A stretch of DNA of 63,887 nucleotides, the filler included, from Octopus bimaculoides (lineage: Eukaryota), in NCBI RefSeq assembly GCF_001194135.2. It is 6 parts of 6 records of this genome, joined end to end, with 100 filler letters (N's around TTAATTAATTAA, not from the genome) between each part and the next. Parts side by side here need not be neighbours in the genome. Positions count along the whole stretch, not along the records: positions 1 to 23,370 come from NC_069008.1; 5 more parts are not named here. One strand, 5' to 3'. The notes under the pieces were generated by a model. That model saw only the letters and a program-made list of their open reading frames with translations. It did no database searches and had not been told where the DNA came from. Of the stretch, positions 1 through 23,160 are shown piece after piece (position 1 is the first letter of the stretch; each line of letters begins with the position of its first letter). The position numbers were made by a program, and so were the translations under genes.

Positions 1-589
1 ATAAATATAAATAAATAAATATAAATAAATAAATATATATATATATATATAAATAAATATATATATATATATAAATAAATATAATCTGTTTCTCCGGTGT
101 TGGTTTGATGGCTCAATAGGTAAAGGTGTTAGTAATTTAACTAATAACCTTGTATGAAAGTAGAGGTTTCAATCTGTATCTAGAATTATATTTTTTTATA
201 TTTTTGTATAAACGAAAAAAAAATAACAAAAAGACTTTCACCTGCTTCCCTCATCCTGACCAGGCTTGAATCCTGGACAGGATAGTTCAAAATGACCCCC
301 TCACCTGGCTCATCAACACTCACCTTTACCCACCAGTCCACCCTGCACGTTTTCTTTAATCCTGGTTCTTATTTCATCATTCTCTTTTCCCAAACCACTA
401 CATCATGAGGATGCAAACACACCAATGCTGGTTAACAAAGAGTGACTGAGACAACACACACACAACAGGCTTCTTTCAGTTTCTGTCTACCAAATCCACT
501 CACAAGTCTTTGGCCAGAAAATGACTTGTCCAAGGTGCCAAGCAGTGGGACTGAACCCAGAAAGGTTGGGAAGCAAGAATCTATATACA

Positions 590-2760: not shown

Positions 2761-3807
2761 TATAAAAACCAGATGTTCATGTGTGGATCATCTTTCATTG
2801 TAGGTTTGTTGGATCAGGCTTGACCTGGGGTTAAACAATAACNNNNNNNNNNNNNNNNNNNNNNNNNNNNNNNNNNNNNNNNNNNNNNNNNNNNNNNNNN
2901 NNNNNNNNNNNNNNNNNNNNNNNNNNNNNNNNNNNNNNNNNNNNNNNNNNNNNNNNNNNNNNNNNNNNNNNNNNNNNNNNNNNNNNNNNNNNNNNNNNNN
3001 NNNNNNNNNNNNNNNNNNNNNNNNNNNNNNNNNNNNNNNNNNNNNNNNNNNNNNNNNNNNNNNNNNNNNNNNNNNNNNNNNNNNNNNNNNNNNNNNNNNN
3101 NNNNNNNNNNNNNNNNNNNNNNNNNNNNNNNNNNNNNNNNNNNNNNNNNNNNNNNNNNNNNNNNNNNNNNNNNNNNNNNNNNNNNNNNNNNNNNNNNNNN
3201 NNNNNNNNNNNNNNNNNNNNNNNNNNNNNNNNNNNNNNNNNNNNNNNNNNNNNNNNNNNNNNNNNNNNNNNNNNNNNNNNNNNNNNNNNNNNNNNNNNNN
3301 NNNNNNNNNNNNNNNNNNNNNNNNNAAAAATATAATCAAAAACAGAAAGGGTTTCTGTAAACTTAGAATTAAAAAAAAAAAAACCATTTACGCTTATGCA
3401 TTTGATTTGCAAGATTCCTGATGTGAAATTATGTGTTGAAACAGATATTGTTACACTTGTTGGGGATGGTCATATTTTACCAATTAAACACACACTTTCC
3501 ATTTGATTTTCACTTAGTTTTATTGTTAACAGTAATCCCTCATCATATATTCGTGGTTCACCTATCAAGGTTTATTATTTAAACTTACATCAATTCCTCC
3601 ATGATGTTGTTTTGCAGTTATAATAAAATAGATATATACAAATTATAAAAATAATTTAAAAAAATATACAGAACTGTTTCTACTTCGAGGAATTTCACCT
3701 ATCGCGGGGGGTGGGGGGACATAACACCCACAATAGTTGAGGGATTAGTGTATTTTGTTTTTAGTTTATTTGTCTGTTGAAGTTATTTGATCAGACATCC
3801 TGTAACT

Positions 3808-4235
3808 TTATTTACATTTGACAGATATTTGTCCTCATCTTGTTGTTAACACGTTTCGGCTGATATACCCTCCAGCCTTCATCAGGTGACCAGAGGAAAT
3901 TTAGAACCTGTGTTCTCGTTCCTAAGGTATTTTTCAATGTTGTTGTTATTATTATTATTATTATATGGCGTAATGGTTAAGAGCACGGGCTACTAACCCC
4001 AAGATTCTGAGATTGATTCCAGGCATAACCTGAAATAATAACAATAATAATAATAATAATAATGTAAAATACCTTAGGAATGAGAACCCAGGTTCTAAAT
4101 TCCCCCAAGACACCTGAAGAAGGCTGGAGAGTACATCAGCCGAAACGTTGTGTTAACAACAAACAAGATGAGGACAAATATCCGTCAAATGTAAATAATG
4201 TACATAATTCCTCATCTCTTAAATATAGAACCAGA
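3808..4235. mobile_element. Inverted pair of a Penelope pseudo-LTR-like repeat around a tRNA-like segment
   Basis: 3808-3930 is the reverse complement of 4065-4200; tRNA-like GGCGTAATGGTTAAGAGC...GATTCCAGG at ~3966-4025; a 3' piece recurs at 4380-4450. Confidence 0.65.
4109..4154 (+). ncRNA. Predicted minimal type-I hammerhead ribozyme (second family)
   Basis: GACAC-CTGAAGA-A-GGCTG-gagagtacat-CAGCC-GAAA-CG-TT-GTGTT: CUGANGA and GAAA core, 5-bp stems I and II, palindromic AACGTT, GUU triplet. Confidence 0.6.
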
Positions 4236-4378: not shown

Positions 4379-4910
4379 CACAAGATGAGGACAAATATCC
4401 GTCAAATGTAAATAATGTACCTAATTCCTCATCTCTTAAAATATAGAACTGTATTCGGTAACTTCTTCAGCGTCTCTCTATCCCAGGCTTAGATAAGAAG
4501 AGACACACGGAACCGAGAGTCATGAAAGAGGCCACAGAATGTGGGTTGAAAGAATGCTGACAAACAGCAGTAAGCACAGGCGTGGCTGTGTGGTAAGAAA
4601 CTTGCCCAGATTTGTTGAAGCAGGCTTGCCTGCAGCCAGCAAAGAAGGTGCTTGGGGAAGAAATACAAGAGGCCTGATACGCCTATTAAATTATGTGATT
4701 TTGACTGTATGTAATTGAACTTTTAAGTGAATCTTATTGCATTCCAAAAGAACAGTGATTTCGAGGGGTTTTCGGTCAGTGGGAGCCGAATACCCCTCTC
4801 ATTTATATCATTCATATTTCATCATCTCTCATTTCGTTAATGTATGCGTCCAGCCCGCTTTGCTTCTTGCAATTCTTTGTAAGGCCTTATGGCCAATTTA
4901 ATGAAATAAA

Positions 4911-5390
4911 GAAGCTTGCTTCCCAACCAAAAGGATACAAGTTCAGTCCTACGGTGTGGCACCTTGGGCAAGTGTCTTCTACTATAGCCTCCAGCCCACC
5001 CAAAGTCTAGAGTAAATTTGGTAGATGGAAACTGAAAGAAGCCCATCATATATGTGTATGTATCTATGTGTGTCAATGTTTGTCTCCCCACCATTGCTTG
5101 ACAACCAGTATCAGTGTGTTTACGTCCCTGTAACTAAGCGGTTCAACAAAAGAGACCGGTAGAATAACTACTAAGCTTAACAGAAACAAAATAAGTCCTG
5201 GGAGTGATTCATTTGACTAAAAATTCTTCAGGGTGGTACCCCAGCATGGCCACAGTCCAATGACTGTAACAAGTAACAGATAAAAAGATAGGTAATGGGA
5301 TTGATTCGTTTGACTAAAACTTTTTCAGGACGGTGCTCCAACATGGTCACGCTCTAATGATTGAAACAAGTGAAAGACAAACTAAAAATA
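4911..5390 (+). mobile_element. SINE family A
   Basis: Same head (GGCACCTTGGGCAAGTGTCTTCTACTATAGCC) and tail. Confidence 0.85.
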
Positions 5391-6083
5391 AAGAAAAAAA
5401 AAAAAAAAAAAAAAAAAAANNNNNNNNNNNNNNNNNNNNNNNNNNNNNNNNNNNNNNNNNNNNNNNNNNNNNNNNNNNNNNNNNNNNNNNNNNNNNNNNN
5501 NNNNNNNNNNNNNNNNNNNNNNNNNNNNNNNNNNNNNNNNNNNNNNNNNNNNNNNNNNNNNNNNNNNNNNNNNNNNNNNNNNNNNNNNNNNNNNNNNNNN
5601 NNNNNNNNNNNNNNNNNNNNNNNNNNNNNNNNNNNNNNNNNNNNNNNNNNNNNNNNNNNNNNNNNNNNNNNNNNNNNNNNNNNNNNNNNNNNNNNNNNNN
5701 NNNNNNNNNNNNNNNNNNNNNNNNNNNNNNNNNNNNNNNNNNNNNNNNNNNNNNNNNNNNNNNNNNNNNNNNNNNNNNNNNNNNNNNNNNNNNNNNNNNN
5801 NNNNNNNNNNNNNNNNNNNNNNNNNNNNNNNNNNNNNNNNNNNNNNNNNNNNNNNNNNNNNNNNNNNNNNNNNNNNNNNNNNNNNNNNNNNNNNNNNNNN
5901 NNNNNNNNNNNNNNNNNNNNNNNNNNNNNNNNNNNNNNNNNNNNNNNNNNNNNNNNNNNNNNNNNNNNNNNNNNNNNNNNNNNNNNNNNNNNNNNNNNNN
6001 NNNNNNNNNNNNNNNNNNNNNNNNNNNNNNNNNNNNNNNNNNNNNNNNNNNNNNNNNNNNNNNNNNNNNNNNNNNNNNNNNNN

Positions 6084-6113: not shown

Positions 6114-7229
6114 CTGTGTGTCACGTAACAATACATTATAAACAACAGCATATAAAATAAATAGCAAGTAAATGTTGGGTTTTAAAAACTCCCTTTTGGG
6201 TAGAAAGAGCAGAAGGCTGCCATATACAAGACTTGAAACACTCACAATATAAGAACAAAGATATTTTACAGTGAAAATTATGTAAAATCTCTAAAAAAAA
6301 AAAAATCTATCACAAATCTTTTGGAAACAAGCATTTAATGAAACAAACAGATTTACGTTTCTTTATCAAAGATTTTTTAATATATAATTGATGATTTTAA
6401 ATTTAAGAAAATCCTTCTTCATGAGGGCGTATATAAGATTTTTAGGGGTTCACACTATAAAATAGTAAGCTGAGGATCCACAATAGCAATTTAAGAGTCC
6501 CCTTAAAAACTTTGCTTTGGATGTATGTATTGGAACAGCTAAATTTCTTTCTCTAACATTTTACATTGTTCAACCGACAGAAGCTAATGTGTGAAAAACT
6601 AAATATAGATTTTGAAAGAAGTTTCTATAAAATTAGTTTTTAAATATCGAATGGTTATGGGGTTCGCTTGAACAAAACTGTGATCAAAGGGATCTGTAGA
6701 TGGAAAAAATGGTTGAGAAACCCTAACGTAAGTGCAGAAAAGTATACAGAGAGATCATAGCTGATGAGAACTGTCTGTCACGGATGCCAGAACTCCCACA
6801 TCATAAATGGGAAGTAGTCTAGTCACTGCATGACTGGCATACGGTAACCAGACATCCCCCACTGATTTCCAGTAAAACAAAAGCACACGATGTGGGAGTT
6901 CTGGTGCCTACGACAAATGACTGTCATCTGCTATGATCTATGTGTGTGCTTTTATGCACCAAGGACTGATATGGGAGGATCGCTCAAGGTTGTTTTAACA
7001 AGGCATCCATGTTAAGCTGGATATAATGATTACCTTTTAGTATGAATACTGCTCCTGTCACTAATAATTAATATACATATATATATTATGGTAGGGGGCT
7101 CTGAAAGGGGTCTAAGAGAGTAGCATCTCTGCCTTCCTGACTTAGTTTACCACCACATTTCTTAAATATCGTGATAGAGGCCTTGGTCTTAGGACCACTC
7201 ATGTCTAGAAACTGAGGTTGGGGGTAAGC

Positions 7230-8610
7230 AAGGGCATGCTCCCCGTAGAAAATCCAGCCACGAAAAAGCCTCATGATAATAGCAAAAGAGAATGGGCACC
7301 AGCCAGCCCAAAGGATGGGGTAGGCTGCACTTGCCTATCTGAAAAAGGAAGGTGCTAGCCCTCATCCTGGATAGCGCAAGCATGACTTGCCTCATGATGG
7401 CCGACGGCCTGAGCAGAAGCTTGGGATGAGGTTGGGAAGTTGGAATGTGGGCAGTCTGGGTAGAAGGGGAACTGAGGTGTGTGAGGAATTGAGGAAGAGG
7501 AGGGTGGATGTGTGCTGTGTGCAGGAGGTTAGGTGGAGGGGCCAGGGTGCTAGATTTGTGGGGTTCAAGGGAAGAAGGTACAAGTTGTGGTGGTCGAGAA
7601 ATAGCAAGGGGACTGGATGTGTGAGAGTTTTGGTGAAGGAAGAAATCTGTAAGAAGGAGGTAGAGGGCAGGAGAAAGAGCGACAGAGGGATGACAGTAGT
7701 GTTAGCATTTGAGGAAGAAGTGGTGAGGGTGATTTGTGGGTTAGGGTCTGCAAAGTGGAAGAGGGATCGCTGAGAAAGAGCGGTTCTTTGATGAAATGGT
7801 GAAGGAGTGGGACTTACAAAAGGTAGATGAACTGGTTTTGGGCATCAGTGATTTTAATGGACATGTTGGGAAAAGGATCCAGGGCTTTGGGGGTGTGCAT
7901 GGGGAGAAATGGAATTGGGGAGAGAAATTTGGAATGAAAGATGCTGTTGGAGTTTTGTTATGAGAAAGAGTTGTGTGTGGCAAATATGTGGTTTAGGAAA
8001 ACAGAGAAAAGGAAGGTGACTTTGAGTGCAGGAGGGAAAGAGACAGAGATTGATTCCCTGTTGGTTGGTAGGAAAAACAGGAAATATCTGAGAGATGTGA
8101 AGACAATACCAGGGGGAGTTGGAGCAGGGGTTGGTGGTTGCTGACTTGGATGAGAGGAAAGTTAAAAAGTGTGCGAGAAAGGGAACGCTTGAGAGGAGAA
8201 AAGAGTGGGAACTGAAGGAAGAAGAAACAAGAACCAAGGTCTGAGGAGTTGGTGAGCATTGATGCACCAGATTTGTAGAAGTCTTTTAAAGAAGGGCTAC
8301 TAAAGGCATATGACGAAGTGTGTGGAAGAAGAAGAGGTAGGAGAGATCGAGGGAGATATGTGGTGGTGGAATGAGGAGGTGAGAGATGCAATAGTGAGGG
8401 TGAAGGAGGCACACAAAGCTTTGTGTAATAATAGGACTGAGCAAATGAAAGCCAGGTGTAATAACATGAAGACTCATGCAAAGAGGGTGGTTGCAAGATC
8501 TATGAGGAGGGGTTGAGTGAGCCGGATGAGAACCCAGATAGAGTGGTTTAGGTTTACTAAATCAACGAAAAACGATGTTGAGGGGAGACGATGCATGAGG
8601 GAGAGTGATG
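7230..8610 (+). mobile_element. Degenerate RTE-clade LINE, 5' region and AP-endonuclease domain
   Basis: LGSWNVGSL...VDVCCVQEVRWRGQGAR...YKLWWS (ORF 7387-7773), ISDFNGHVG and WWWNEEV motifs in shifted frames; several stops and frameshifts. Confidence 0.9.
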
Positions 8611-9377: not shown

Positions 9378-9755
9378 ATAGCATTCTGTATATCCTACAT
9401 AATGGGGATGTACTGCAGTTACAACACTGTAGTATTCATCTTGAGAAAACACCCCGTACAGACATATGGTGCTAAAAAGCAAAGAAATATCAACAGAGGA
9501 TGAAAAGCAACCAGCAGTGACAGTGGAATTGCAATGATAATGGATACTTGCAACCAATGATGTGGATGTATGCCGAAATCCTAGAAATAGCAACTCAACC
9601 ACCAAACACTGCTGAATGCTTCTTGTTTGTTACCAATACGTTTCTATACTTTCCAGCACTCTATGCCTATACAAGATGCTTTCTCAAGGCAAATACTGGT
9701 ATGTTATGGATTTCTTACAGCATACCTGCATTAAGTATGATATACAGAATGCTAT
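9378..9755 (-). other. Long imperfect hairpin with sense-strand G.U bias
   Basis: Arms ~9378-9553 and ~9569-9755. In the 60-bp core 9431-9490 vs 9638-9697: 43 Watson-Crick plus 12 G.U pairs on the minus strand. Confidence 0.8.
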
Positions 9756-10974: not shown

Positions 10975-11089
10975 TTCATATAGGGTCCACCACTCATGTT
11001 TCCTCCGCCTCCTCCAGGGCCCATGCCTCGGCCACCACCACGGAACCTCTGACGGCCTCCACGGAATCTCCCACTACTGCCTCCACGAC
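10975..11089 (-). CDS. CHTOP: CHTOP exon, RGG/GAR-rich region
   Basis: Acceptor gtctgttgcag|, 115 nt, phase 1 to 2, donor AA|GTAAGT. Translates (G)RGGSSGRFRGGRQRFRGGGRGMGPGGGGGNMSGGPYM. Phase matches the previous exon. Confidence 0.85.
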
Positions 11090-11237
11090 CTGCAACAGAC
11101 AAGTAGGGTTGGTGCTGTTCTAATTTGTTACTGGGTGCATTAAGTATAGAAATGTGTGGCTGACTGTGAACAGGTGTGTAACTGATGGCTAGCAAATATG
11201 TGTGCAAATTAAATTGAGCTTTACAGAGTGAAATATA

Positions 11238-11467
11238 TATAAATATATAGTTTTAGGGAAAAGAAGCAAGGTTCATGAACTCATCGATGAAAATCCACTG
11301 TCACATAGAAAAATTAATAATTAAAAGCACAATAAATGAGTATAATATATTACAAAGTAAATATAAGATATTGTGCTTTTAATTATTAATTTTTCTATAT
11401 GTGACAGTGGATTTTCATCGATGAGTTCATGAACCTTGGTTCTTTTCCCTAAAACTATATATTTATA
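11238..11467. repeat. Near-perfect 97-bp inverted repeat (fold-back)
   Basis: Arms 11238-11334 and 11369-11467; one mismatch, one 2-nt bulge, 34-nt spacer. Confidence 0.95.
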
Positions 11468-11477
11468 AATAGAGATA

Positions 11478-11968: not shown

Positions 11969-12224
11969 CTCGTCCACGTAACATTGGCATATTGCGTCCA
12001 TCCTCCATACCACCAGGGCCGCTTGTCCCTAGTGAGAGTGCACTGTGCTGTCGAGACAGGTTAGAGCCCCGGCTCCGTCCTGACATGCCACGCATACCTG
12101 GGTTCAGACCTCGCCCCCTGAAGCGCCCGCCTCTTGACCGCCCGCGCCCGCCACGCCCCCTCATCACCGACAGGCTCAGTCGTGACTTCACGTTACTCTT
12201 GCCCAGCCGTTGCTTCAGACTGCG
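11969..12224 (-). CDS. CHTOP: CHTOP exon: SLKQRLGKSN motif and start of RG/RGG-rich region
   Basis: Acceptor ttttgtaatatttacag|, 256 nt, phase 0 to 1, donor G|GTAATG. Translates RSLKQRLGKSNVKSRLSLSVMRGRGGRGRSRGGRFRGRG...; human has SLKQRLGKSNIQARLG. In frame with the upstream exon. Confidence 0.92.
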
Positions 12225-14004
12225 CTGTAAATATTACAAAAAGAAGATGTGAATGAATATATTCATAAACACACACACACACAGATACAGGTACACCTAT
12301 ACATATATATATACATGCAGAAAACACACACCTATACATATATACACAAGTGTCTATATATATGCATGCAGATACACCTACACACACACACGTGTACATA
12401 TACATACACATGCATATATACACACATATACACGTGTGTATGTGTCGCATAACTGGCCCATTTAAAAGCACCCTTGAATTGTTGGGCAATGTGCTGTGCA
12501 TGTGAAGACCGGAGTGAAATCGCAGTCGCGGTTGATGCCAGTGCCACCTGACACCCGCTACACTCTTGGAGTGGTTGGCATTAGGAAGGGCATCCAGCTG
12601 TAGAAAGCTTGCCAAATCAGATTGGACCCTGGTGCAGCCTCCCAGCTTCCCAGTCCCCAGTCAAACCATCCAACCCATGCCAGCATGGAAAGTGGATATT
12701 AAATGACAATGATGATGATGACACACCTATATACAACCATCAACATCACCAACCTATAAGATTCCATCTCTTTCGTATCTGCTTGGGTTGTTTGGGTTTA
12801 TCTCCACCGTGAGGCCCAACATCTTAAGATAAGATCACTACTTGCTCCCAAATGTTTCTCTTCCACAGTTTCCCTCTTTTTCTATCCCTTGGCACTTTTC
12901 TTCATCCCTTCCAGTCATCCTCCATACATACCACATATCCATACAGGTTGTGTCTTCTCCCTTCCACACTACAGCTGGATCCTCATACACCCATTCCCAC
13001 CCACTCCCTCAGCTTACCTGTGCTCTATCATTCATGCATGCTAATTCCTTATAAAGGGTAAAGATCCCCTTCAGTCATGGATGACCATGGGATTGCACCT
13101 ACAAAGTTTCCCTGCCAAGGAACAAGTCCAGGCAAAGGCTGTTTGTGGAACCCCAGCAGTTGCCCATGTGCACCAGCCTGCCCTCTCCATGCCACCAATG
13201 TTGTCCAGGGGAAAAGCAAAAGGGCCAATACAGCTTGACACCAGTGATGTTGCAACTTATTTCTACAGTGGTGTGAACTGGAGCAATGTGAAATGAAATG
13301 TCTTACTCAAGAAAACAACACAGCCCAATTTGGAAATCGAACACACTACCCCATGATTGCAAGCCCGACACTCTAATCATCAAGCCATGCGCCTTCACAG
13401 GCAAGCTAATATCACACATCCACAATAAGACATCAAGTTGGCAAAATGCTCAGCAGCATCTCGTTCTGAGATCAAATTCTTCAAAATCAGTCTTTGCCTT
13501 CCATCCTTTTGGGGCTGATAAAATAAGTACCAGTTGAGAGGGGGTGGGGTTTAATGTAATCAACTTACCCCCCTTCACCAAAATTTCAAACCATGTGCCA
13601 AATGCTAGAAAAGAATATAACAGCTACTGGAGAATATTCTCACATCTACATACAACATCCATGTTCCAATACCATGCAGTGTCACATTTTGTACACAAGC
13701 ATCATAACACTTTGCCCTTCACCCAGAGGGAGAAAGAAAGCCTCAGTTACATAAACAGTTAATAGGCTGCTGGATTTTCTCCACTGTGGCCTTACTCTGA
13801 CTACTACGTTTCACAACACCCACAGCTAATTAGGTAATTAGGTCACCCACGTCAGCACTACCCAACTGTTTATGCCCCATGGACCAGTTACATGCAAGAC
13901 AATTTTTTTTTACAAACCAGAGGATCACATGCTTAACAAAACAATAAAGTACATAACATAATTTAGCCCCTTTTTCATAAAGATCACTCTGTTAAATATA
14001 ATGT

Positions 14005-14190: not shown

Positions 14191-14494
14191 GGTAATCTCT
14201 GTCACAAGTAACCTTTCATGGTGATATTGTAGTTTGAGCAATATCTATTCTAAATAATCAGTCAATGATACCAGTAGAACATCGATAAAAAGGGAAGTAT
14301 TTTGTGATCATCATTTCATCATCCGAACAGGGATGTCATCGTAAACCAACAGAAGATTCAAAATATCAAATTCTATACAACTAACTCTATTCACAGCAAC
14401 CGTCCTGAGACAAGCCCTGGTCCTGGGATATGAAACTTCCTCATGTCGTGCCACCCAACTTCTTCCTTGAGAGCCTCATGCTGGCTACATCCAC

Positions 14495-15005
14495 TGATGG
14501 CTACATCCATGTTCTGAGTGAGGTGGTGAAGCCCTGGACTGACTGGTTAGCTGCAGGGTGGCAGTACATGTGACAGCAAGACTCTGTGCTCTGCCACACC
14601 AGCCGGAAGACCAAGGTTTGGATTGTCAGGGAATTTCTTTGATCGTACAGCCCCTGACAATTGGCCTCCCAACTCATCTGACTGCAATCCCTTCAACTTC
14701 TTTGTGTGGGGTACGGTGGAACGAGAAACCAACAAATCCAGATGCAACATGAAAGGTGACCTGAGGGTCCAGATTACCAGGGCCTCCAGGGGCCTAAAAC
14801 AAGAGACAGTGATAAAGGCCTGTGGCTGGTTCCAAGACTGCCTGGAGGCTGTCATCAAGGCTAAAGGCAGGTTCCTTGATTAAGATCAACAGAACATGTT
14901 ATGAAGACAAACTGACCCACATTTGATGAATCTATCTCAAAAAATAAAAACATTATTTTTTCCTGAGACAATCATCATGTGAACGAACATCGTTTGCACT
15001 CTGTA
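14495..15005 (+). mobile_element. Tc1/mariner-superfamily transposase C-terminal relic (maT/DD37D-like)
   Basis: VLSEVVKPW...QQDSVLCHTSRKT...NWPPNSSDCNPFNFFVWG...LEAVIKAKG, with a stop and frameshift; probable TIR CGTTTGCACTCTGTA near 14991-15005. Confidence 0.75.
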
Positions 15006-16114
15006 GCTTTGAGATTTTGATGATGTGATTGCTTATTTTGAGAATGACATTGTAAGGCAAGTGTGAGGGGCCAGACTTAGCTGCTTTGAACATAAAGCAG
15101 GTAGAATATTCTGTATTTTGGGTGGGCCATGGCTGGTTTAGATGCTAAAGGGTTGATTATTACATATATAATGCAAAAACACCCAGCAAGCAAGAAAATA
15201 GAAATGAAATTTTAAAATTTATTCTTTTTGTTTGACCCAATACCAAATGATCCACTGCTTAGATTATGGAAACAGAAGCCCTCAAACACAGCTACTCATG
15301 GGCATGCCAGGGTCTTTGAAGAAAAACCTCATTTTATGAGTGCACTGTTTGCTTTTTTTGTGCTGCTTTTGTGGATTCCTATGACTCTCCTCCACCATCC
15401 AATTCCATTATTATGAATTTTGAATCGGGACATTGAGTTATAATGGATCTTTCACTAGCTGATTCCACAACCATGGATGCAACCCCTATGGATGGTACTC
15501 TCTTGACAGAGTTTGGTGATCCTGCCCATTGCTCTTGTAGGATTCCTCTGCTCAGCATCAATGTAAGAAGCAGCATCCTTGGCTCAGTTGAGTTCTTCTG
15601 CTATCATTTCACAATCAACCATGCTGCAGTCCCATGACTTCGCCATGTCCTTGACAGGGTGGCTGAATGGGTGCTATGCCTTGCCAAAGGGCAGCCTGTA
15701 ACTATGCAAGGCACGGTCATCACTCCGTGAAGTATTTTCAAAGACACCTGCACTTATTGTTAGCTACTCCTAAGTATCTGTTGTACACACCTTCTCCATC
15801 AGCCTGCCTGTCAACCCTACAGCATCTGTCTATATACACCCATATTGTACATGGGTGTATACAAAATTCTTTCCTGTCCATTGAAACGTTGCCATATTAC
15901 CTCTTGAATTCAGGCTTTTTGTTTCACGTGTGGATATGTGTCCTCTAATTCTATGACTGATTCAGTGACGAGAACTAGGGTCGTTAGATAAAAAGAAGTT
16001 CTCATGGGCAGCCAAGATTCAACTCCTTTATGGCCTAGAGAAGGTGGGGAGGGTGGGTAGGAAAGTAGATGCAACAAAGCTTGTACACTTCTCATAAACC
16101 ACACACACACAGGT

Positions 16115-16975
16115 ACAGATGTGGCTGTATGGTATGAAGTTTGCTACCCAACCACTTAGTTTGGGTTCAGTGCTACTGTGTGACACCTTGGGCAAGCGTC
16201 TTTTGTTGTAGCTTCAGTCTGACCAAAGGCTTCTGAATGGATTTGGTAGATATAAACTGAAAACACTTTATGTGTGCATGCATATATATATATATATATA
16301 TATACACACATGTTTATATACACACATATGTGTGCATGTATGTGTCTCCTGGCCTTGGCACTGTGAGGTAGATGTAAATGAGTGTCACTGTTATACAAGC
16401 AGTGTCATTCACTTTCAATGTTCTGCGAGAACATGCCTCACCAAGGGGAACTGTTAGCTTGCTTGGAAACCAGTGAGGGTTGGCAACAGGAAGGACATCC
16501 AGCCATAGAAAAGAAGCTGCCTCTATAAACTTTGTCCAACCCATGCAAGCATGGGAAAGTGAAAGTTAAAATAATGATAATGATATATACTTCTCTGTAT
16601 AGGCACAGGTGTAGCTGTGTGGTAAAAAGCTGGCTTCTGAACCACATGGTTCTGGGTTCAGTCACACTGTGTGGCACCTTGCACACATGTCTTCTACGAG
16701 AGCCTTGGCCTACTAAAGCCTTGTGATTGGATATGGTAAACAGAAACATGTGTGTGTGTGTGTTTGCCACCCACAACTGTTTGACAACCAGTGTTGGTGT
16801 GTTTACATCCCTATAACTTAGTGGTTCAGCAAAAGAGGGCAATAGAATAAGTACCAGGTTGAAGAAGAAAAGTACTGGGATTGTTGATTCATTTCACTGA
16901 AAAAAAGATTTCAAGATGGTGCCCCAGCATGGCCATAGTCTAATGACTGAAACAAGTAAAAGATAAAAGATGTGT
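16115..16975 (+). mobile_element. Two SINE family A copies flanking an RTE-tail repeat
   Basis: Heads at ~16115 and ~16605; RTE-tail motif GGTTGGCAACAGGAAGGACATCCAGC at ~16478. Confidence 0.8.
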
Positions 16976-16978
16976 GGA

Positions 16979-17009
<31 letters not shown>

Positions 17010-17777
17010 TCCAAGATGTAACTACACATGGACTGTTGATAGTTTTTTTTCTTCTTCCTTTTCTTTTGGACTCTTCTCTGTTTCCTGTTTCCGAAGAAGA
17101 GCTTTGCTCGAAATATAAAACAACCACTCTTTCTTTCCTTCTCTGAGTGTCTTATGAATACTTTGCATGTACTACGTTCTCACGTTGCTGTTTTTTTTTC
17201 CTGTTGTCTTTTTTCTCCAGTTTTTAAAAAAATTAATTATATATATATATATATATATAATTTTTCAAAGTAAACTCTGCAATCGTTACCAATATAGCAT
17301 AAGATTTCACCTCAAAAAATTTTTAATTAGATTCCTTAAGGATCGTTCTCCTTGTTTATATATCCAAAGTTTTAAATTTTCACATTTAAGAAAGAGATTT
17401 GACACTGAAGTTAAAAATATCCATGTAATAAGCCAATGTACAATTGTACAGAAATGTTTACATTTGATGAATAGATGGATATATTAAACTTCGGTGTCAA
17501 ATCTCTTTATTAAATGTATAAATTTAAAACTTTGGATATATATATGTGGGGGGGAAGCTACATATCTCCCCTACTACAAGCTGTCTGTTCCTGTGTTCAG
17601 TTGAGTGGTTTTGTCCTGCATATTACTCGAGGACCTCAATGTGTTGAGCCATAAAAACCATGTCAGAGCTGACAGTACAGCTTGGCACAGTTCTCTGGCT
17701 TTCAAGTCCACGTCAAACCATGCAAGTATGTATATCTCATTATGCAACGGTTGTAAAATATATTGGTTTCACATTTT

Positions 17778-18205
17778 AGCACAAGGCCTGCAAGTTCAGG
17801 GGAGAGGTAAGTCGATTACATCGACCCCAGTGTTCAACTGGTACTTGTTTTATTGACCCTGAAAGGATGAAAAACAAAGTTGACCTTGGCAACATTTGAA
17901 CTCAGAACTTAAAGATGAACGAAATGTTGTAAAGCATTTTACCCACCGTGCTAATGATTCTACCAGCTCGCCACTTTAGGATTGAAAAATATATTGGCTT
18001 CCCATTTTGGCACAAGGCCTGCAAGGTCAGGAGATAGGCTAGTCAATTACATGGACCTCAGTATCCAACTGGTACTTATTTTATCGACCCTCAGAGGTTG
18101 AAAATCAAACTCAACCTCAGCAGCATTTGAACTCAGCATGTAACGATGAACAAAATGCTGCAAAGCCTTCTGCCCGGTGTGCTAACAATTCTGCCAGCTC
18201 GCCAC
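17778..18205 (+). mobile_element. Two tandem copies of dispersed repeat family B
   Basis: GCACAAGGCCTG...GTCGATTACATCGACCCCAGT...TTTGAACTCAG...CCAGCTCGCC. Further copies at ~1525-1720, 22575-22745, 33050-33260, 37696-37860(-), 37925-38345, 44885-44985(-) and 62608-62785. Confidence 0.85.
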
Positions 18206-18407
18206 TTTTGGATTGTAAAAGATTTCAAAATGTCTTTTACATCACACTGCTGCCACTAATATTCGTTATAGGAACAGGTATGGTTGTGCAGTTCAGAAGC
18301 TTGCTTTCCAGCCATGTGGTTCTGGGTTCTGTTCCACTGCATGGCACCTTGGCCTCAAGTGTCTTCTATAATGGCTCCAAATTAACCAGTGCCTCGTGGA
18401 AACCCTT

Positions 18408-18442
<35 letters not shown>

Positions 18443-18629
18443 ATGTTCCTTCCACTGCTTAACAGTCTATATTGGTTTTTGTCCCCATAGCCAAGTGGTT
18501 CGGCAAACAAGTCCTACAGAACAAGTGTAGCAGAACGCTGGGGTCAATTTGTTTGACCACACCCTTTAAGGTAGTACCCCAGCGTGGCTGCAATCCAATG
18601 ACAAGGACAAGTAAAAGAGAAAAGATATG

Positions 18630-18789
18630 TAGGCACAGGAGTGGCTGTGTTGTAAGAAGCTTGCTTCTCAACCACATGGTTGCAGGTTCATTCCCACTGT
18701 GACACCTTGGGCAAGTTTCTTCTACTGTTGTATCAGGCCAACCAAAGCCTTGTGAGTGGATTTGGTAGACGGAAACTGAAAGAAGCCCG

Positions 18790-18820
<31 letters not shown>

Positions 18821-19290
18821 NNNNNNNNNNNNNNNNNNNNNNNNNNNNNNNNNNNNNNNNNNNNNNNNNNNNNNNNNNNNNNNNNNNNNNNNNNNNNNNN
18901 NNNNNNNNNNNNNNNNNNNNNNNNNNNNNNTTTGGTAGCCATGATAAAACTCCGAGTTTCGGATGCCAGAGTGATGTTGGCATGGGTTCCCACCCGGGCA
19001 TCCAAAACTCGGAGTTTTATCATGGCTACCAAATAAGTGTCACATATTTTTACAGATATATATATATATATTTATGTGTGTGCCTTTGCGTCTGTGTTTG
19101 TCCCCGCAACACCGCTTGGCAACCGGTGCTTGTTTACATCCCCATAACTTAGCGGTTCACCAAAAGAGACTGATAGAATAAGTACCAGGCTTAAAAATTA
19201 AGTACTGGGGTCGATTCATTCGACTAAAAATTCAAGGCGGTGCTCCAGAATGGTCGCAGTCTAAGGAGTGAAACAGTTGAAAAGACAATA
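18630..19290 (+). mobile_element. SINE family A spanning a gap and a small fold-back insert
   Basis: Head 18630-18790, tail 19075-19290. Confidence 0.8.
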
Positions 19291-20273
19291 AAAGAATAAA
19301 AGATATAAATAAATAAATAAATAAATACAAACATACAGAGCCTGAATGAGAGTTTCATGCAAAAGAATACTCCGAGTAGCCAAGGAGTGAATGAATGGTT
19401 TGACTTGACACAAAATATACTCTACTACATGTACTGAGTACTCTTCTCATTTGCAACTCTAGACGTAAACGTACACATATTATGAATAAATACCTGACTG
19501 AGATAGGTACTGGGGTCAATATGATCAGCTAAAACCCTTGAAGGCGGTGCCCCAGCATGGCCGTAGTCCAATGACTGAAACCAGTAAAAGAATAAAAGAA
19601 TATATATATATATGTATTCATATACATACATATATATATATGTATATATATACATGTGACAAATATTGAAAATTGTTTTTTTTTTACTGGGGGTGCCTTC
19701 TGCATAGAAAACATATACTGAAGTGCATGGTACCCTTGCACTTAAGATAGTGAGCTGAAAATAATTACGAATCAACTCGAAACCGTAACCATAATGAGAA
19801 GTAAAGTCATTAATGTTAATGAAAGAATTAATAAAAAGCTGAAACTATAAAAAGAACTGAGGACTTCAATTTTTTTTATCTACCAAAAAATTATTCCAAG
19901 ACATCAAAGTTGGCAGGGGTGAATTTAAAGGGATGACACTTGTCTCGGGTCACACTGAGGCAATGGTAAAAGACACTTACTCACTCAATGTGTCCCACAG
20001 CAGACTTGAAGCCGGGACCTCGTTAGTGTGAAGCAAACTTTTTACCCACTTGACCCAAGATTGCAACCATACTTTTTCTACTGTTGCCCCCACCTCCAAT
20101 TCACCTCAACTATGTTCACCACCACCCCTCCCCACGGGCCATAATTTCCACACCTTGGCTCCCCATTGATTCACACCTCCTCCTGCTGCATCATACACTA
20201 AAAACACACATCCCCACTCAAACTAGTCCTTCTTCTCTAAATATGCAACCCTGAAATTCCTTTCCCATAAGTT

Positions 20274-20924
20274 TTAACCCTTTAGCATTTGAAACAGCGA
20301 TATAATGGCCCAAACATTTTACCAGTTTTATGTTAAGACTGGACAGATCCAGTCTCTCACACCAACCCTACAATATTCTTCTAAAAACAAATAATCACTT
20401 GAAGCTACAAGGTAATGTATGGTTAACTCTTTAGCATTTAAACCAGCCATATCCGGCCACAGTATTCCACTTGTCTTATGTTCACACTGGCCAGATCTGG
20501 CCTCTCACACCTACCCTTCAATGTCAATCTAAAAACTAACAGTTGCCTCATTGAAACCTCAGAGCGACAAGATAATGCATGATTAATTCAAAACAATGTG
20601 AATAAATAAGCATTACTTTTGACAGAGTAATCTGTAAGCTGAAGGGTTTATAGCAGCCATATTCAGCCCAAATTTTCTACCTGTTTAATTGCTCAAACTG
20701 GCCAGATCTGGCTTCTCCCACCTACCCTACAATGTCATTCTAAAAATATAGTCATATCATTGAAATCTCAAAGCTATGAGATAATGCATGATTAATTCAA
20801 AACAATGTGAATAAATAAGCATTACTTTTGACAGAGTAATCCGAATGCTAAAGGGTTAATTCAAAGCAATATGAATGAAATAAGGATTACATTTGGAAAG
20901 GTAATCTGAATGCTAAAGGGTTAA
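20274..20924. mobile_element. Cluster of piggyBac-type MITE copies
   Basis: Ends TTAACCCTTTAGCATT / AATGCTAAAGGGTTAA (TTAA plus CCC terminus); about three overlapping units. Confidence 0.75.
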
Positions 20925-21707: not shown

Positions 21708-21773
21708 CCTCTTGATCTTCAGGGCCGCGATCACGCTCGGTCGGTTAGCCATCTGCTGGGCTAGCCTACGGTT
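21708..21773 (-). CDS. CHTOP: CHTOP exon, N-terminal region; 5' part lies in gap 21774-22300
   Basis: Translates [22 protein letters not shown], matching human CHTOP [22 protein letters not shown] as recalled. Donor AGG|GTAAGA, phase 0. Confidence 0.92.
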
Positions 21774-22827
21774 NNNNNNNNNNNNNNNNNNNNNNNNNNN
21801 NNNNNNNNNNNNNNNNNNNNNNNNNNNNNNNNNNNNNNNNNNNNNNNNNNNNNNNNNNNNNNNNNNNNNNNNNNNNNNNNNNNNNNNNNNNNNNNNNNNN
21901 NNNNNNNNNNNNNNNNNNNNNNNNNNNNNNNNNNNNNNNNNNNNNNNNNNNNNNNNNNNNNNNNNNNNNNNNNNNNNNNNNNNNNNNNNNNNNNNNNNNN
22001 NNNNNNNNNNNNNNNNNNNNNNNNNNNNNNNNNNNNNNNNNNNNNNNNNNNNNNNNNNNNNNNNNNNNNNNNNNNNNNNNNNNNNNNNNNNNNNNNNNNN
22101 NNNNNNNNNNNNNNNNNNNNNNNNNNNNNNNNNNNNNNNNNNNNNNNNNNNNNNNNNNNNNNNNNNNNNNNNNNNNNNNNNNNNNNNNNNNNNNNNNNNN
22201 NNNNNNNNNNNNNNNNNNNNNNNNNNNNNNNNNNNNNNNNNNNNNNNNNNNNNNNNNNNNNNNNNNNNNNNNNNNNNNNNNNNNNNNNNNNNNNNNNNNN
22301 GCTCGTTTCAATTTGTTTCAAACAAGAAGGAAAAGAAGAAAAAAAAAAATCGTTTCATCTCAACAAAGTGATGTGACGATGATTGTCAGAGAAATGATGA
22401 TTAAGGAACTAATGAGGAAGAGTAAAAGAACTGATATTGGCAAGGGTTATAATGATGACAAGAGAAATGATGATGATGATGATGATGATGATGATAACAG
22501 CAAGAAAGAGATTGAATGGCTTAGAAGTTTTCTCAAAATAAAATAAAATAAAATAAGACATAGCATTAATAATTCTATTATAGGCAAAAAGGCTTCAAAT
22601 ATAAGGGGGAAGGGGTCAGTTGATTACATTGGCCCCAGGATGAAAAACAAAAGCTGACCACGGTGGCATTTGAACTTAAGAACATAGGAGCCAGAGAAAT
22701 GCTGTTGAGCATTTTTGTCCAGTATGGTAATGATTCCGCCAGCTTGCAACTGTAGATTTACCAGAGATAGATCAGCATTGGTTATGGTAACTTTGTATAC
22801 TCTGGAGCAACGAAAGACTGTTGTATT

Positions 22828-23160
22828 GAAGGACCAACAGAGTCTTGGGAACTGCTCAGACCAACAGATTACTAGGTGTGCTATATGCTGCAGGACTGGC
22901 AGGGGTTGCTATATGCTAAAGGACCAACTGGGGCTGCTATGTGCTGAAGAACTGATTGGGTTGCTATATGCTGAAGGACCAATTGGGGTTGCTATATGTT
23001 GAAGGACCAATTGGGGTTGCTATATGTTGAAGGACCAACTGGGACTGTTATATGCTGAAATACAAACTGGGACTGTTATATGCTGAAATACCGAGGCAGT
23101 TATATACTGAAGGACCAACTGGGTTGCTAGATGCTGAAGGGCCAAGTGTTGCTATACATT
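22828..23160. repeat. 28-bp minisatellite, about 11 degenerate copies
   Basis: Unit GCTATATGTTGAAGGACCAATTGGGGTT; period 28 measured at 22981 and 23009. Confidence 0.9.

What the first reader, a model, noticed from the sequence alone, without database searches (positions are those of the whole stretch)
9378..9755. ~380-nt hairpin downstream of the last firm CHTOP exon, paired preferentially on the sense strand
Seen: two ~175-nt arms align in reverse. In the ungapped 60-bp core there are 17 differences: 12 are G.U wobbles on the minus (CHTOP sense) strand, 3 are wobbles on plus, 2 are transversions. That gives 55/60 paired on minus and 46/60 on plus. I found no other copy in the window. A neutrally decaying fold-back should show no such strand bias; the 6731-6960 repeat splits 7:7. 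Inference: a selected RNA structure, for example a hairpin-RNA/endo-siRNA or miRNA precursor, an ADAR substrate, or a CHTOP autoregulatory element. Known: mammalian CHTOP autoregulates through intron retention involving an intronic stem-loop. Caveat: transcription-linked A-to-G mutation bias pushes in the same direction.
Basis: partly seen in the sequence, partly recalled or inferred. Interest (0 to 1): 0.78.

Follow-up and report, generated by a model that had tools for sequence, protein, structure and literature searches.

The report
Palindromic repeat hairpin in CHTOP intron
A 378-base palindromic, transposon-like repeat sits in an intron of the CHTOP gene and would fold into a long RNA hairpin that pairs clearly better on the gene's sense strand; the bias is real but only moderately significant, and the element most likely belongs to the abundant class of fold-back repeats in this genome rather than being a dedicated regulatory RNA.

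Summary
RNAfold gives -158.3 kcal/mol on the minus (CHTOP sense) strand and -120.0 on the plus strand. Over the ~100-bp aligned core the split is 17:4 (binomial p=0.007). A swap simulation reaches the energy gap in 0.5% of trials, or 3% if a 64:36 mutation bias is allowed. Four other fold-backs and the intragenic SINE-like copies in the same gene show no bias (35:32).

- The element has perfect 17-bp termini around a 25%-diverged interior, which looks like a MITE.
- It has no Rfam match, no coding homology and no second copy in the window.
- It lies downstream of the RG exons, so it is not the counterpart of the vertebrate CHTOP intron-2 stem-loops.
- Molluscs are reported to lack an endo-siRNA pathway.
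- Octopus is reported to be unusually rich in such dsRNA-forming repeats, which ADAR hyper-edits.

Best reading: an ordinary palindromic repeat that is a passive ADAR substrate. Selection on the RNA structure is not excluded. Copy number and conservation could not be tested, because no cephalopod genome was reachable.

The parts
9378..9755 (-). Whole fold-back element, seen as an RNA hairpin on the CHTOP sense strand
   Evidence: Inverted repeats. MFE -158.3 on minus against -120.0 on plus. 138 bp with 25 G.U on minus.
9378..9394 (.). Left terminal inverted repeat, ATAGCATTCTGTATATC, 17/17 complementary to the right end
   Evidence: Unique in the window. A perfect 17-bp run has probability about 0.75^17 = 0.008 at the interior's 25% divergence.
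9739..9755 (.). Right terminal inverted repeat, the reverse complement of 9378-9394
9431..9530 (.). Left arm core, pairing with 9594-9697
Evidence: Gapped arm alignment gives 17 sense-strand G.U, 4 antisense G.U and 4 transversions.
9594..9697 (.). Right arm core. It includes the 27-bp uninterrupted sense-strand helix 9663-9689 with 9439-9465
9531..9593 (.). Apical, poorly paired centre of the palindrome
   Evidence: MFE structure and arm alignment.
10975..11089 (-). CHTOP exon C, the second RG-rich exon. Acceptor ttgcag|GT, donor AA|GTAAGT. It is the last recognisable exon, and the hairpin starts 1,220 nt downstream of its donor
   Evidence: Sequence and ORF translation.
11969..12224 (-). CHTOP exon B (RSLKQRLGKSNVKSRL...RGRG), conserved in a second mollusc locus (L001)
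21708..21773 (-). CHTOP exon A (NRRLAQQMANRPSVIAALKIKR), cut at its 5' side by an assembly gap
   Evidence: Named homologue 'chromatin target of PRMT1 protein-like'.

Best explanation
It is an old, non-coding palindromic repeat. Most likely it is a MITE-like terminal-inverted-repeat element, or otherwise a local inverted duplication, lying in the CHTOP intron that follows the RG-rich exons.

Because the intron is transcribed, the element folds in the pre-mRNA into a ~138-bp imperfect double-stranded hairpin. In a cephalopod such hairpins are typical targets of ADAR hyper-editing and are removed with the intron. On this reading the hairpin is a by-product, not a dedicated device.

The excess of sense-strand G.U pairs would then come from one or more of three sources:
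- differences between the arms that already existed in the element family before insertion;
- a modest strand-asymmetric transition bias (sense-strand A>G and C>T);
- sampling luck in a post-hoc pick.

Shown here: the structure, the strand bias, the intronic position, and the lack of coding or known-RNA homology. Inferred: transposon origin, ADAR editing, and the absence of a specific function.
For: - Perfect 17-bp termini surround an interior that is only ~75% self-complementary. This is expected if the ends were kept by a transposase while the interior diverged within the family. It is unexpected for uniform post-insertion decay (about 0.008). It is also somewhat unexpected if G.U changes were freely tolerated all along a selected stem (about 0.05 for none in 17 bp).
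- The element is small, AT-rich (38% GC) and non-coding. Both arm ORFs have no Pfam hit and no homologue among 5.8 billion and 1.8 billion proteins.
- The same 23-kb piece holds at least four other fold-backs of other families: 3840-4159, 6720-6970, 11234-11471 and 17357-17542. It also holds a Tc1/mariner-type DDE relic and a LINE endonuclease fragment. Palindromic repeats are therefore commonplace here.
- The literature reports that O. bimaculoides has an exceptionally high density of loci forming long near-perfect dsRNA and the strongest hyper-editing signal. It also reports that palindromic repeats are edited on their own (PMC5625713).
- There is no Rfam family on the hairpin body.
- The bias loses most of its significance outside the chosen core: 20:8 against background 35:32 gives Fisher p=0.11. 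All SINE-like copies pooled hint at some sense-strand A>G/C>T excess (51:29). With that bias, 17:4 has p=0.08.
Against: - In the core, changes that keep sense-strand pairing make up 17 of 25 differences. In the other fold-backs and intragenic repeats of the same gene they make up 35 of 133 (Fisher p=1e-4).
- Transitions outnumber transversions 21:4 in the core, against about 1:1 in the controls.
- The controls inside the gene show no transcription-linked asymmetry (35:32).
- No target-site duplication can be demonstrated. A TA is possible but is itself palindromic.
- No second copy was found anywhere I could look, so family membership is unproven.
Confidence: 0.55

Rival explanations
1. The hairpin is a selected RNA structure in the CHTOP pre-mRNA. 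Purifying selection keeps the sense-strand pairing, so transitions that give G.U survive while A.C mismatches and transversions are purged. Possible roles are an ADAR-recruiting 'editing inducer' hairpin, or a structure that modulates splicing or retention of this intron.
For: - 17:4 sense to antisense wobble split, and a transition to transversion ratio of 21:4 in the core.
- Pair-preserving to pair-breaking changes are 17:8, against 35:98 in local controls (p=1e-4).
- The energy gap of 38 kcal/mol is reached in only 0.5% of symmetric swaps.
- The other fold-backs in the same transcript fold equally well on both strands.
- Long intronic hairpins that boost editing at nearby sites are known in mammals (PMC3479170, listed).
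Against: - No conservation or covariation data could be obtained.
- The only other mollusc CHTOP locus available shows no hairpin within 10 kb downstream of exon B, although that species is too distant for intron alignment.
- If G.U changes were neutral, the implied purged divergence would be very large, about 68 changes per 100 sites between the arms.
- The outer and apical thirds carry many indels and mismatches.
- The finding was selected post hoc.
- Significance fades when the whole arms are used (p=0.04-0.11).
Confidence: 0.25
2. The bias is a strand-specific hypermutation footprint. Either deamination of the exposed non-template (sense) DNA strand during transcription produced A>G and C>T changes, or the hairpin RNA was ADAR-edited (A-U to I.U) and later copied back into DNA. 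Both would yield G.U pairs on the sense strand without any selection.
For: - The excess consists only of transitions, all of the class that corresponds to sense-strand A>G or C>T, spread over both arms (12 and 8).
- Removing about 14 excess transitions leaves an arm divergence of about 11%, similar to the other fold-backs.
- All SINE-like copies pooled show 51:29 in the same direction.
Against: - The G of the G.U pairs shows no ADAR-like depletion of a 5' G: 7 of 25, against 13 of 67 for all paired G.
- There is no poly(A) tail, target-site duplication or other retroposition mark.
- The four other fold-backs and the five intragenic SINE-like copies in the same transcription unit show no asymmetry (35:32).
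- The sense-strand G-C skew of the surrounding introns is not consistently positive.
Confidence: 0.12
3. The hairpin is a small-RNA precursor, either a hairpin-RNA/endo-siRNA locus or a miRNA-bearing hairpin, diced into 21-23-nt RNAs.
For: It is a long, stable hairpin on the transcribed strand. Its architecture resembles Drosophila hpRNA loci (my own knowledge).
Against: - Molluscs, including O. bimaculoides, are reported to lack siDicer, siAgo and endo-siRNA signatures (PMC12479628).
- The arms have no similarity to any protein-coding sequence that could be a target.
- There is no Rfam miRNA family on the hairpin body. Only sub-threshold low-complexity hits touch the TG/TA microsatellite at its left edge.
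- The best helices lie about 80 nt from the apical loop, which does not fit Drosha/Dicer measuring.
Confidence: 0.04
4. The hairpin is the cephalopod counterpart of the vertebrate CHTOP autoregulatory intron element, in which CHTOP binds an intronic stem-loop, the intron is retained, and the mRNA is degraded by NMD.
For: The gene is a CHTOP orthologue, and vertebrate CHTOP does autoregulate through intronic stem-loops (PMC5175361).
Against: - The vertebrate element lies in intron 2, directly after the 81-nt exon 2 and upstream of the RG exons. It consists of two short predicted stem-loops in 142 nt.
- This hairpin lies after the second RG exon, is 378 nt long, looks like a repeat, and shares no detectable sequence with the other mollusc locus.
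Confidence: 0.03

Closest known systems
Palindromic MITEs / fold-back TIR elements (for example the near-palindromic Harbinger-derived repeat of Xenopus cited in PMC5625713; human MADE1 and zebrafish Angel from my own knowledge)
   Same: A few hundred bp long, non-coding and AT-rich. Perfect terminal inverted repeats. The whole element folds into one hairpin. Located in an intron. Several unrelated fold-backs lie nearby.
   Different: No demonstrable target-site duplication and no second copy available. The arms are much more diverged (about 25%) than the termini. The differences between arms are biased toward sense-strand G.U.
ADAR hyper-editing substrates formed by repeats in metazoan pre-mRNAs (Porath et al. 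2017, PMC5625713)
   Same: A long, nearly continuous dsRNA formed within one pre-mRNA by a palindromic repeat, in the species group with the highest reported density of such loci.
   Different: Editing was not observed here. With 25 G.U pairs and several internal loops it is less perfect than the 'nearly perfect' duplexes described.
Intronic editing inducer hairpins (Daniel et al. 2012, PMC3479170)
   Same: A long intronic hairpin at a distance from exons that could recruit ADAR.
   Different: No nearby short editing-site hairpin or recoding site is known for this gene. The mammalian element is conserved, and conservation could not be tested here.
Vertebrate CHTOP intron-2 stem-loops (Izumikawa et al. 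2016, PMC5175361)
   Same: An intronic RNA structure in the same gene family.
   Different: A different intron (after the RG exons rather than after exon 2), a different size (378 nt against two small stem-loops in 142 nt), and repeat-like anatomy. No sequence relation could be shown.
Drosophila hairpin-RNA (hpRNA) endo-siRNA loci (my own knowledge)
   Same: An inverted-repeat hairpin several hundred nt long, transcribed from one strand.
   Different: The host phylum is reported to lack the siRNA machinery (PMC12479628). The arms match no target gene.

Membership tests
MITE / TIR fold-back transposon | Terminal inverted repeats | tested here: met
   17/17 perfect termini at 9378-9394 and 9739-9755.
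MITE / TIR fold-back transposon | Target-site duplication flanking the TIRs | tested here: inconclusive
   The 8-bp flanks differ (gcgtatat against tctgaact). A TA duplication is possible at 9379-9380 and 9753-9754, but TA is palindromic and cannot be told apart from the IR.
MITE / TIR fold-back transposon | Multiple dispersed copies in the genome | not testable with these tools
   No other copy in the 23-kb piece. Zero hits in metagenome, prokaryote-genome and viral collections, none of which is a cephalopod genome collection. The source genome is not on record.
MITE / TIR fold-back transposon | Short, with no coding capacity | tested here: met
   378 nt. The arm ORFs (70 and 77 aa) have no Pfam hit and no homologue.
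ADAR hyper-editing substrate | Long dsRNA on the transcribed strand | tested here: met
   138 bp on the sense strand, longest uninterrupted helix 27 bp, -158.3 kcal/mol, z -12.9. Intronic position follows from the exon model.
ADAR hyper-editing substrate | Clustered A-to-G mismatches between RNA and DNA | not testable with these tools
   No RNA-seq data available.
hpRNA / endo-siRNA locus | Host has a dedicated siRNA Dicer and Argonaute, and 21-23-nt duplex reads arise from the arms | not testable with these tools
   The literature reports that molluscs, including O. bimaculoides, lack siDicer, siAgo and endo-siRNA signatures (PMC12479628). No small-RNA reads were available here.
hpRNA / endo-siRNA locus | Arms derived from, or complementary to, a target gene | tested here: not met
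   No similarity of the arm translations to any protein, and none to the rest of the window.
Animal miRNA precursor | Match to a known miRNA family, or a ~60-80-nt hairpin with a ~35-bp stem next to the terminal loop | tested here: not met
   An Rfam E<=1 scan gives no hit on the hairpin body. The stable helices lie about 80 nt from the apex of a 378-nt hairpin.
Vertebrate-type CHTOP autoregulatory intron element | Located in the 5' part of the intron that follows the small N-terminal exon 2, upstream of the RG exons | tested here: not met
   The hairpin lies 1,220 nt downstream of the second RG exon. The vertebrate element is described in PMC5175361.
Vertebrate-type CHTOP autoregulatory intron element | Sequence conserved among species and bound by the CHTOP N1 domain | not testable with these tools
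   Only one distant mollusc locus (L001) was retrievable. No similarity there. Binding needs an experiment.
CHTOP gene (host) | Conserved N-terminal motif and RG-rich exons on the minus strand | tested here: met
   Exon A/B query hits 'chromatin target of PRMT1 protein-like' from Saccostrea. Exons A and B are conserved in L001. Consensus splice sites are present. The C-terminal duplication domain was not found in the window.

The most novel reading that the evidence does not exclude
The hairpin is single-copy, conserved among octopods, and held under purifying selection for pairing on the CHTOP pre-mRNA. On this reading it is a repeat-derived structure recruited as a cis-regulatory dsRNA, for example an ADAR-recruiting or splicing-modulating element in a gene that itself controls mRNA export and intron detention. 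The 17:4 G.U asymmetry would be the footprint of that selection.
Probability: 0.2. Interest if true: 0.6.

Novelty: new member of a known kind. Interest (0 to 1): 0.3.

Why it matters
If it is an ordinary palindromic repeat, it matters only as one more example of why octopus transcripts carry so much ADAR-editable dsRNA.

The strand-biased G.U pattern is a cheap, sequence-only statistic. Applied genome-wide to intronic fold-backs, it could separate three things: transcription-linked mutation bias, editing-related hypermutation, and real selection on RNA structure.

If this particular hairpin proved conserved, it would be a rare case of a very long intronic structure under selection in an mRNA-export factor gene.

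Tried and rejected
**Finding other copies or orthologues**
- Two pattern scans of metagenome contigs, two of prokaryotic genome contigs and one of viral contigs gave 0 hits.
- Exact-ORF look-ups of window ORFs were not on record.
- Homology searches with both arm ORFs found nothing.

**Orthologous intron comparison**
- The only related locus (L001, from an ENA metagenome assembly) shares exons A and B, at 100% and about 72% amino-acid identity. Nothing else aligns, and there is no hairpin within 10 kb. It is too distant to test intron conservation.

**Other checks that led nowhere**
- Coding origin of the arms: both arms carry an open frame in the homologous register. There is no Pfam hit or homologue, and the chance of such a frame is not small. 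Rejected.
- ADAR neighbour signature at the G of the G.U pairs: no 5'-G depletion, but n=25 is too few to decide.
- Rfam at permissive E-values: only TG/TA microsatellite look-alikes of mir-297, mir-1277 and similar families, all far below gathering scores.
- PDB and Pfam on the concatenated CHTOP exons: no hits. The RG-rich sequence is low-complexity and the C-terminal domain is missing.
- Search for the C-terminal CHTOP exons: only a weak 'LDAYINEMRDDEI*' candidate near 4853-4812 with a poor acceptor. Not accepted.
- The first run of the swap simulation timed out and was repeated with multiprocessing.

Full report
**1. The observation**

The sequence at 9378-9755 is a fold-back. The repeat finder reports complementary arms 9378-9415/9718-9755 (82%) and 9431-9487/9641-9697 (74%).

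It reproduces exactly: 43 matches, 12 transitions that are G.U on the minus strand, 3 that are G.U on the plus strand, and 2 transversions.

Folded as RNA:
- The minus strand reaches -158.3 kcal/mol (z = -12.9 against dinucleotide shuffles). It has 138 base pairs, 25 of them G.U, and a 27-bp uninterrupted helix (9663-9689 with 9439-9465).
- The plus strand reaches -120.0 kcal/mol (z = -7.3), with 130 pairs, 12 of them G.U.

A gapped alignment of the two arms gives 20 sense-wobble against 8 antisense-wobble transitions overall. In the well-aligned core (9431-9530 / 9594-9697) it gives 17 against 4, with 4 transversions.

**2. Is it more than chance?**

- 17:4 has a two-sided binomial p of 0.007, and 20:8 has p = 0.036.
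- I kept the sequence and its differences but assigned each transition at random to one arm or the other. The observed energy gap (-38.3 kcal/mol) was reached in 0.5% of 400 trials. When a 64:36 bias was built in, it was reached in 3%.

I built local controls from the same gene.
- Four other fold-backs in the window (3840-4159, 6720-6970, 11234-11471, 17357-17542) split 6:5, 6:7, 0:0 and 1:1. They fold about equally well on both strands.
- Seven copies of a SINE-like repeat, compared with their majority consensus, give sense-strand A>G 26, T>C 14, C>T 25 and G>A 15 (51:29).
- The five copies that lie inside the gene give 22:19. The excess comes from the two copies at 352 and 2368, which may lie outside the transcription unit.

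Pooled intragenic controls are 35:32 with 66 transversions. Against them:
- the core's 17:4 has Fisher p = 0.023;
- its 17 pair-preserving against 8 pair-breaking changes has p = 1e-4;
- whole-arm counts give only p = 0.04-0.11.

Base-composition skews of the surrounding introns are small and inconsistent: sense-strand T-A skew +0.06, G-C skew -0.04.

The bias is therefore real. It is not mirrored by neighbouring repeats, and it is moderately significant. It was chosen post hoc from a scan, and it depends partly on the choice of core.

**3. Context**

The minus strand encodes a CHTOP orthologue.
- Exon A (NRRLAQQMANRPSVIAALKIKR, 21773-21708) is cut by an assembly gap.
- Exon B (RSLKQRLGKSNVKSRL...RGRG, 12224-11969) and exon C (11089-10975; acceptor ttgcag|GT, donor AA|GTAAGT) have consensus splice sites.
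- Exons A and B are conserved in a second mollusc locus, L001, from an ENA assembly.
- A query made of exon A (in its full-length L001 form) plus the first residues of exon B hits 'chromatin target of PRMT1 protein-like' of an oyster.

The C-terminal exons were not found in the window. Exon C ends at a strong donor in mid-codon. The hairpin, 1,220 nt further downstream, is therefore inferred to be intronic.

The piece is repeat-rich. It contains the fold-backs above, a LINE endonuclease fragment (PF03372, 7387-7773), a Tc1/mariner-type DDE relic (14481-14793), SINE-like copies and several tandem arrays.

**4. What the element is**

- It is 378 nt, 38% GC and non-coding.
- Both arms carry an open frame in the homologous register. 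Neither has a Pfam match or any homologue in the 5.8-billion or 1.8-billion protein collections.
- No Rfam family matches the hairpin body even at E <= 1. The only hits nearby are far-sub-threshold matches of the flanking TG/TA microsatellite to low-complexity miRNA models.
- The outermost 17 bp are perfectly complementary, with not even a G.U pair, while the interior differs at about 25% of positions. Uniform decay after insertion would give such a run with probability about 0.008.

This last pattern is what a TIR transposon family looks like. The termini are maintained for transposition, while the interior is free to drift within the family before the copy inserted.

A target-site duplication cannot be shown. 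A TA is possible but indistinguishable from the palindrome. No second copy exists in the window.

**5. Mechanism**

The most probable account (about 0.55) is a MITE-like or fold-back repeat that is transcribed passively as part of the intron and forms a long imperfect dsRNA.

Octopus bimaculoides is reported to have an exceptionally high density of loci able to form long dsRNA and the strongest hyper-editing signal among 19 species. Palindromic repeats are reported to be edited on their own (PMC5625713). ADAR hyper-editing followed by intron turnover is therefore the likely fate.

On this account the G.U asymmetry would come from family history, a modest mutation asymmetry, or luck.

The main rival (about 0.25) is purifying selection for pairing on the sense RNA. 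It explains the 17:8 against 35:98 contrast and the 21:4 transition excess. It also implies that a very large amount of pair-breaking change was purged, and it sits awkwardly with the many indels in the outer and apical thirds.

A third possibility (about 0.12) is strand-specific hypermutation, either non-template-strand deamination or an edited RNA copied back to DNA. The 5' neighbours of the wobble G's show no ADAR-like G depletion (7/25), and there are no retroposition marks.

**6. Comparison with known systems**

- The vertebrate CHTOP autoregulatory element consists of two short predicted stem-loops within a 142-nt conserved stretch in the 5' part of intron 2. It lies beside the 81-nt exon 2, is bound by the N1 domain, and sits upstream of the RG exons (PMC5175361). 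The present hairpin differs in intron, size and nature, so it is not a member of that class.
- An hpRNA/endo-siRNA role is disfavoured. A clade-wide survey found no siDicer, siAgo or Dicer-signature endo-siRNAs in molluscs, including O. bimaculoides (PMC12479628), and the arms match no gene.
- A miRNA precursor is not supported by Rfam or by geometry.
- The closest known kinds are palindromic MITEs and repeat-derived ADAR substrates.

**7. Limits**

- Pattern scans of the metagenome, prokaryotic-genome and viral collections found nothing.
- The window's ORFs are not on record.
- The single related locus is too distant. Only exons align, and there is no hairpin within 10 kb.

**8. Verdict**

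This is a real, strongly strand-asymmetric intronic hairpin. It is most likely an ordinary member of a very common repeat class in this genome, with a residual chance of about 20-25% that the asymmetry reflects selection on the RNA. Interest is low to moderate (0.3). Novelty: a new member of a known kind.

Noticed in passing
window 3840-4159, 6720-6970, 11234-11471, 17357-17542: Four further fold-back elements of unrelated sequence lie in the same 23-kb piece, with arms of 70-136 nt at 81-95% complementarity. They fold equally well on both strands, and their transitions split evenly (pooled 13:13). Palindromic repeats look very common in this genome.
   Followed up: partly
window 340-580, 2360-2775, 4900-5295, 16105-16310, 16590-16980, 18620-18815, 19055-19300: There are seven copies of a ~400-nt SINE-like repeat with an internal TA/CA microsatellite. 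Against their consensus, the two copies at 352 and 2368 show a strong sense-strand A>G/C>T excess (29:10), while the five copies inside the CHTOP introns do not (22:19). The reason is unexplained.
   Followed up: partly
window 7387-7773 (+), probably extending to about 8516: A LINE-type apurinic endonuclease fragment (Pfam Exo_endo_phos, E=2.9e-7) lies on the strand opposite to CHTOP, followed by further broken ORFs.
   Followed up: partly
window 14481-14793 (+); L001 12167-12478 (-): A decayed Tc1/mariner-type DDE transposase relic is 37-38% identical at protein level to one in the other mollusc locus. The L001 copy is flanked by 43-nt TIRs that begin TACAGGGTG (L001 11979-12021 / 12834-12876).
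   Followed up: no
window 21774-22300, 18800-18900, 5420-6080, 2850-3350: These are assembly gaps (runs of N). The gap at 21774 cuts CHTOP exon A, and the C-terminal CHTOP exons are missing from the piece. The gene model here is therefore incomplete.
   Followed up: partly
window 4812-4853 (-): A short frame reads GLDAYINEMRDDEI*, which resembles the CHTOP C-terminal LDAYM motif. A phase-compatible AG precedes it, but the upstream tract is purine-rich, so it is probably not a real exon.
   Followed up: partly
window 17751-18220, 20274-20860, 22879-23145, 608-950: There are tandem arrays with periods of 231 nt (2 copies), about 210 nt (3 copies, seen by self-BLAST), 28/83 nt (about 10 copies) and a 24-nt TA/TG-rich unit (about 15 copies).
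   Followed up: no
L001 1820-3209 against window 21773-11969: The intron between CHTOP exons A and B is about 1.1 kb in the other mollusc locus and about 9.5 kb here. Most of the extra length is repeats.
   Followed up: no
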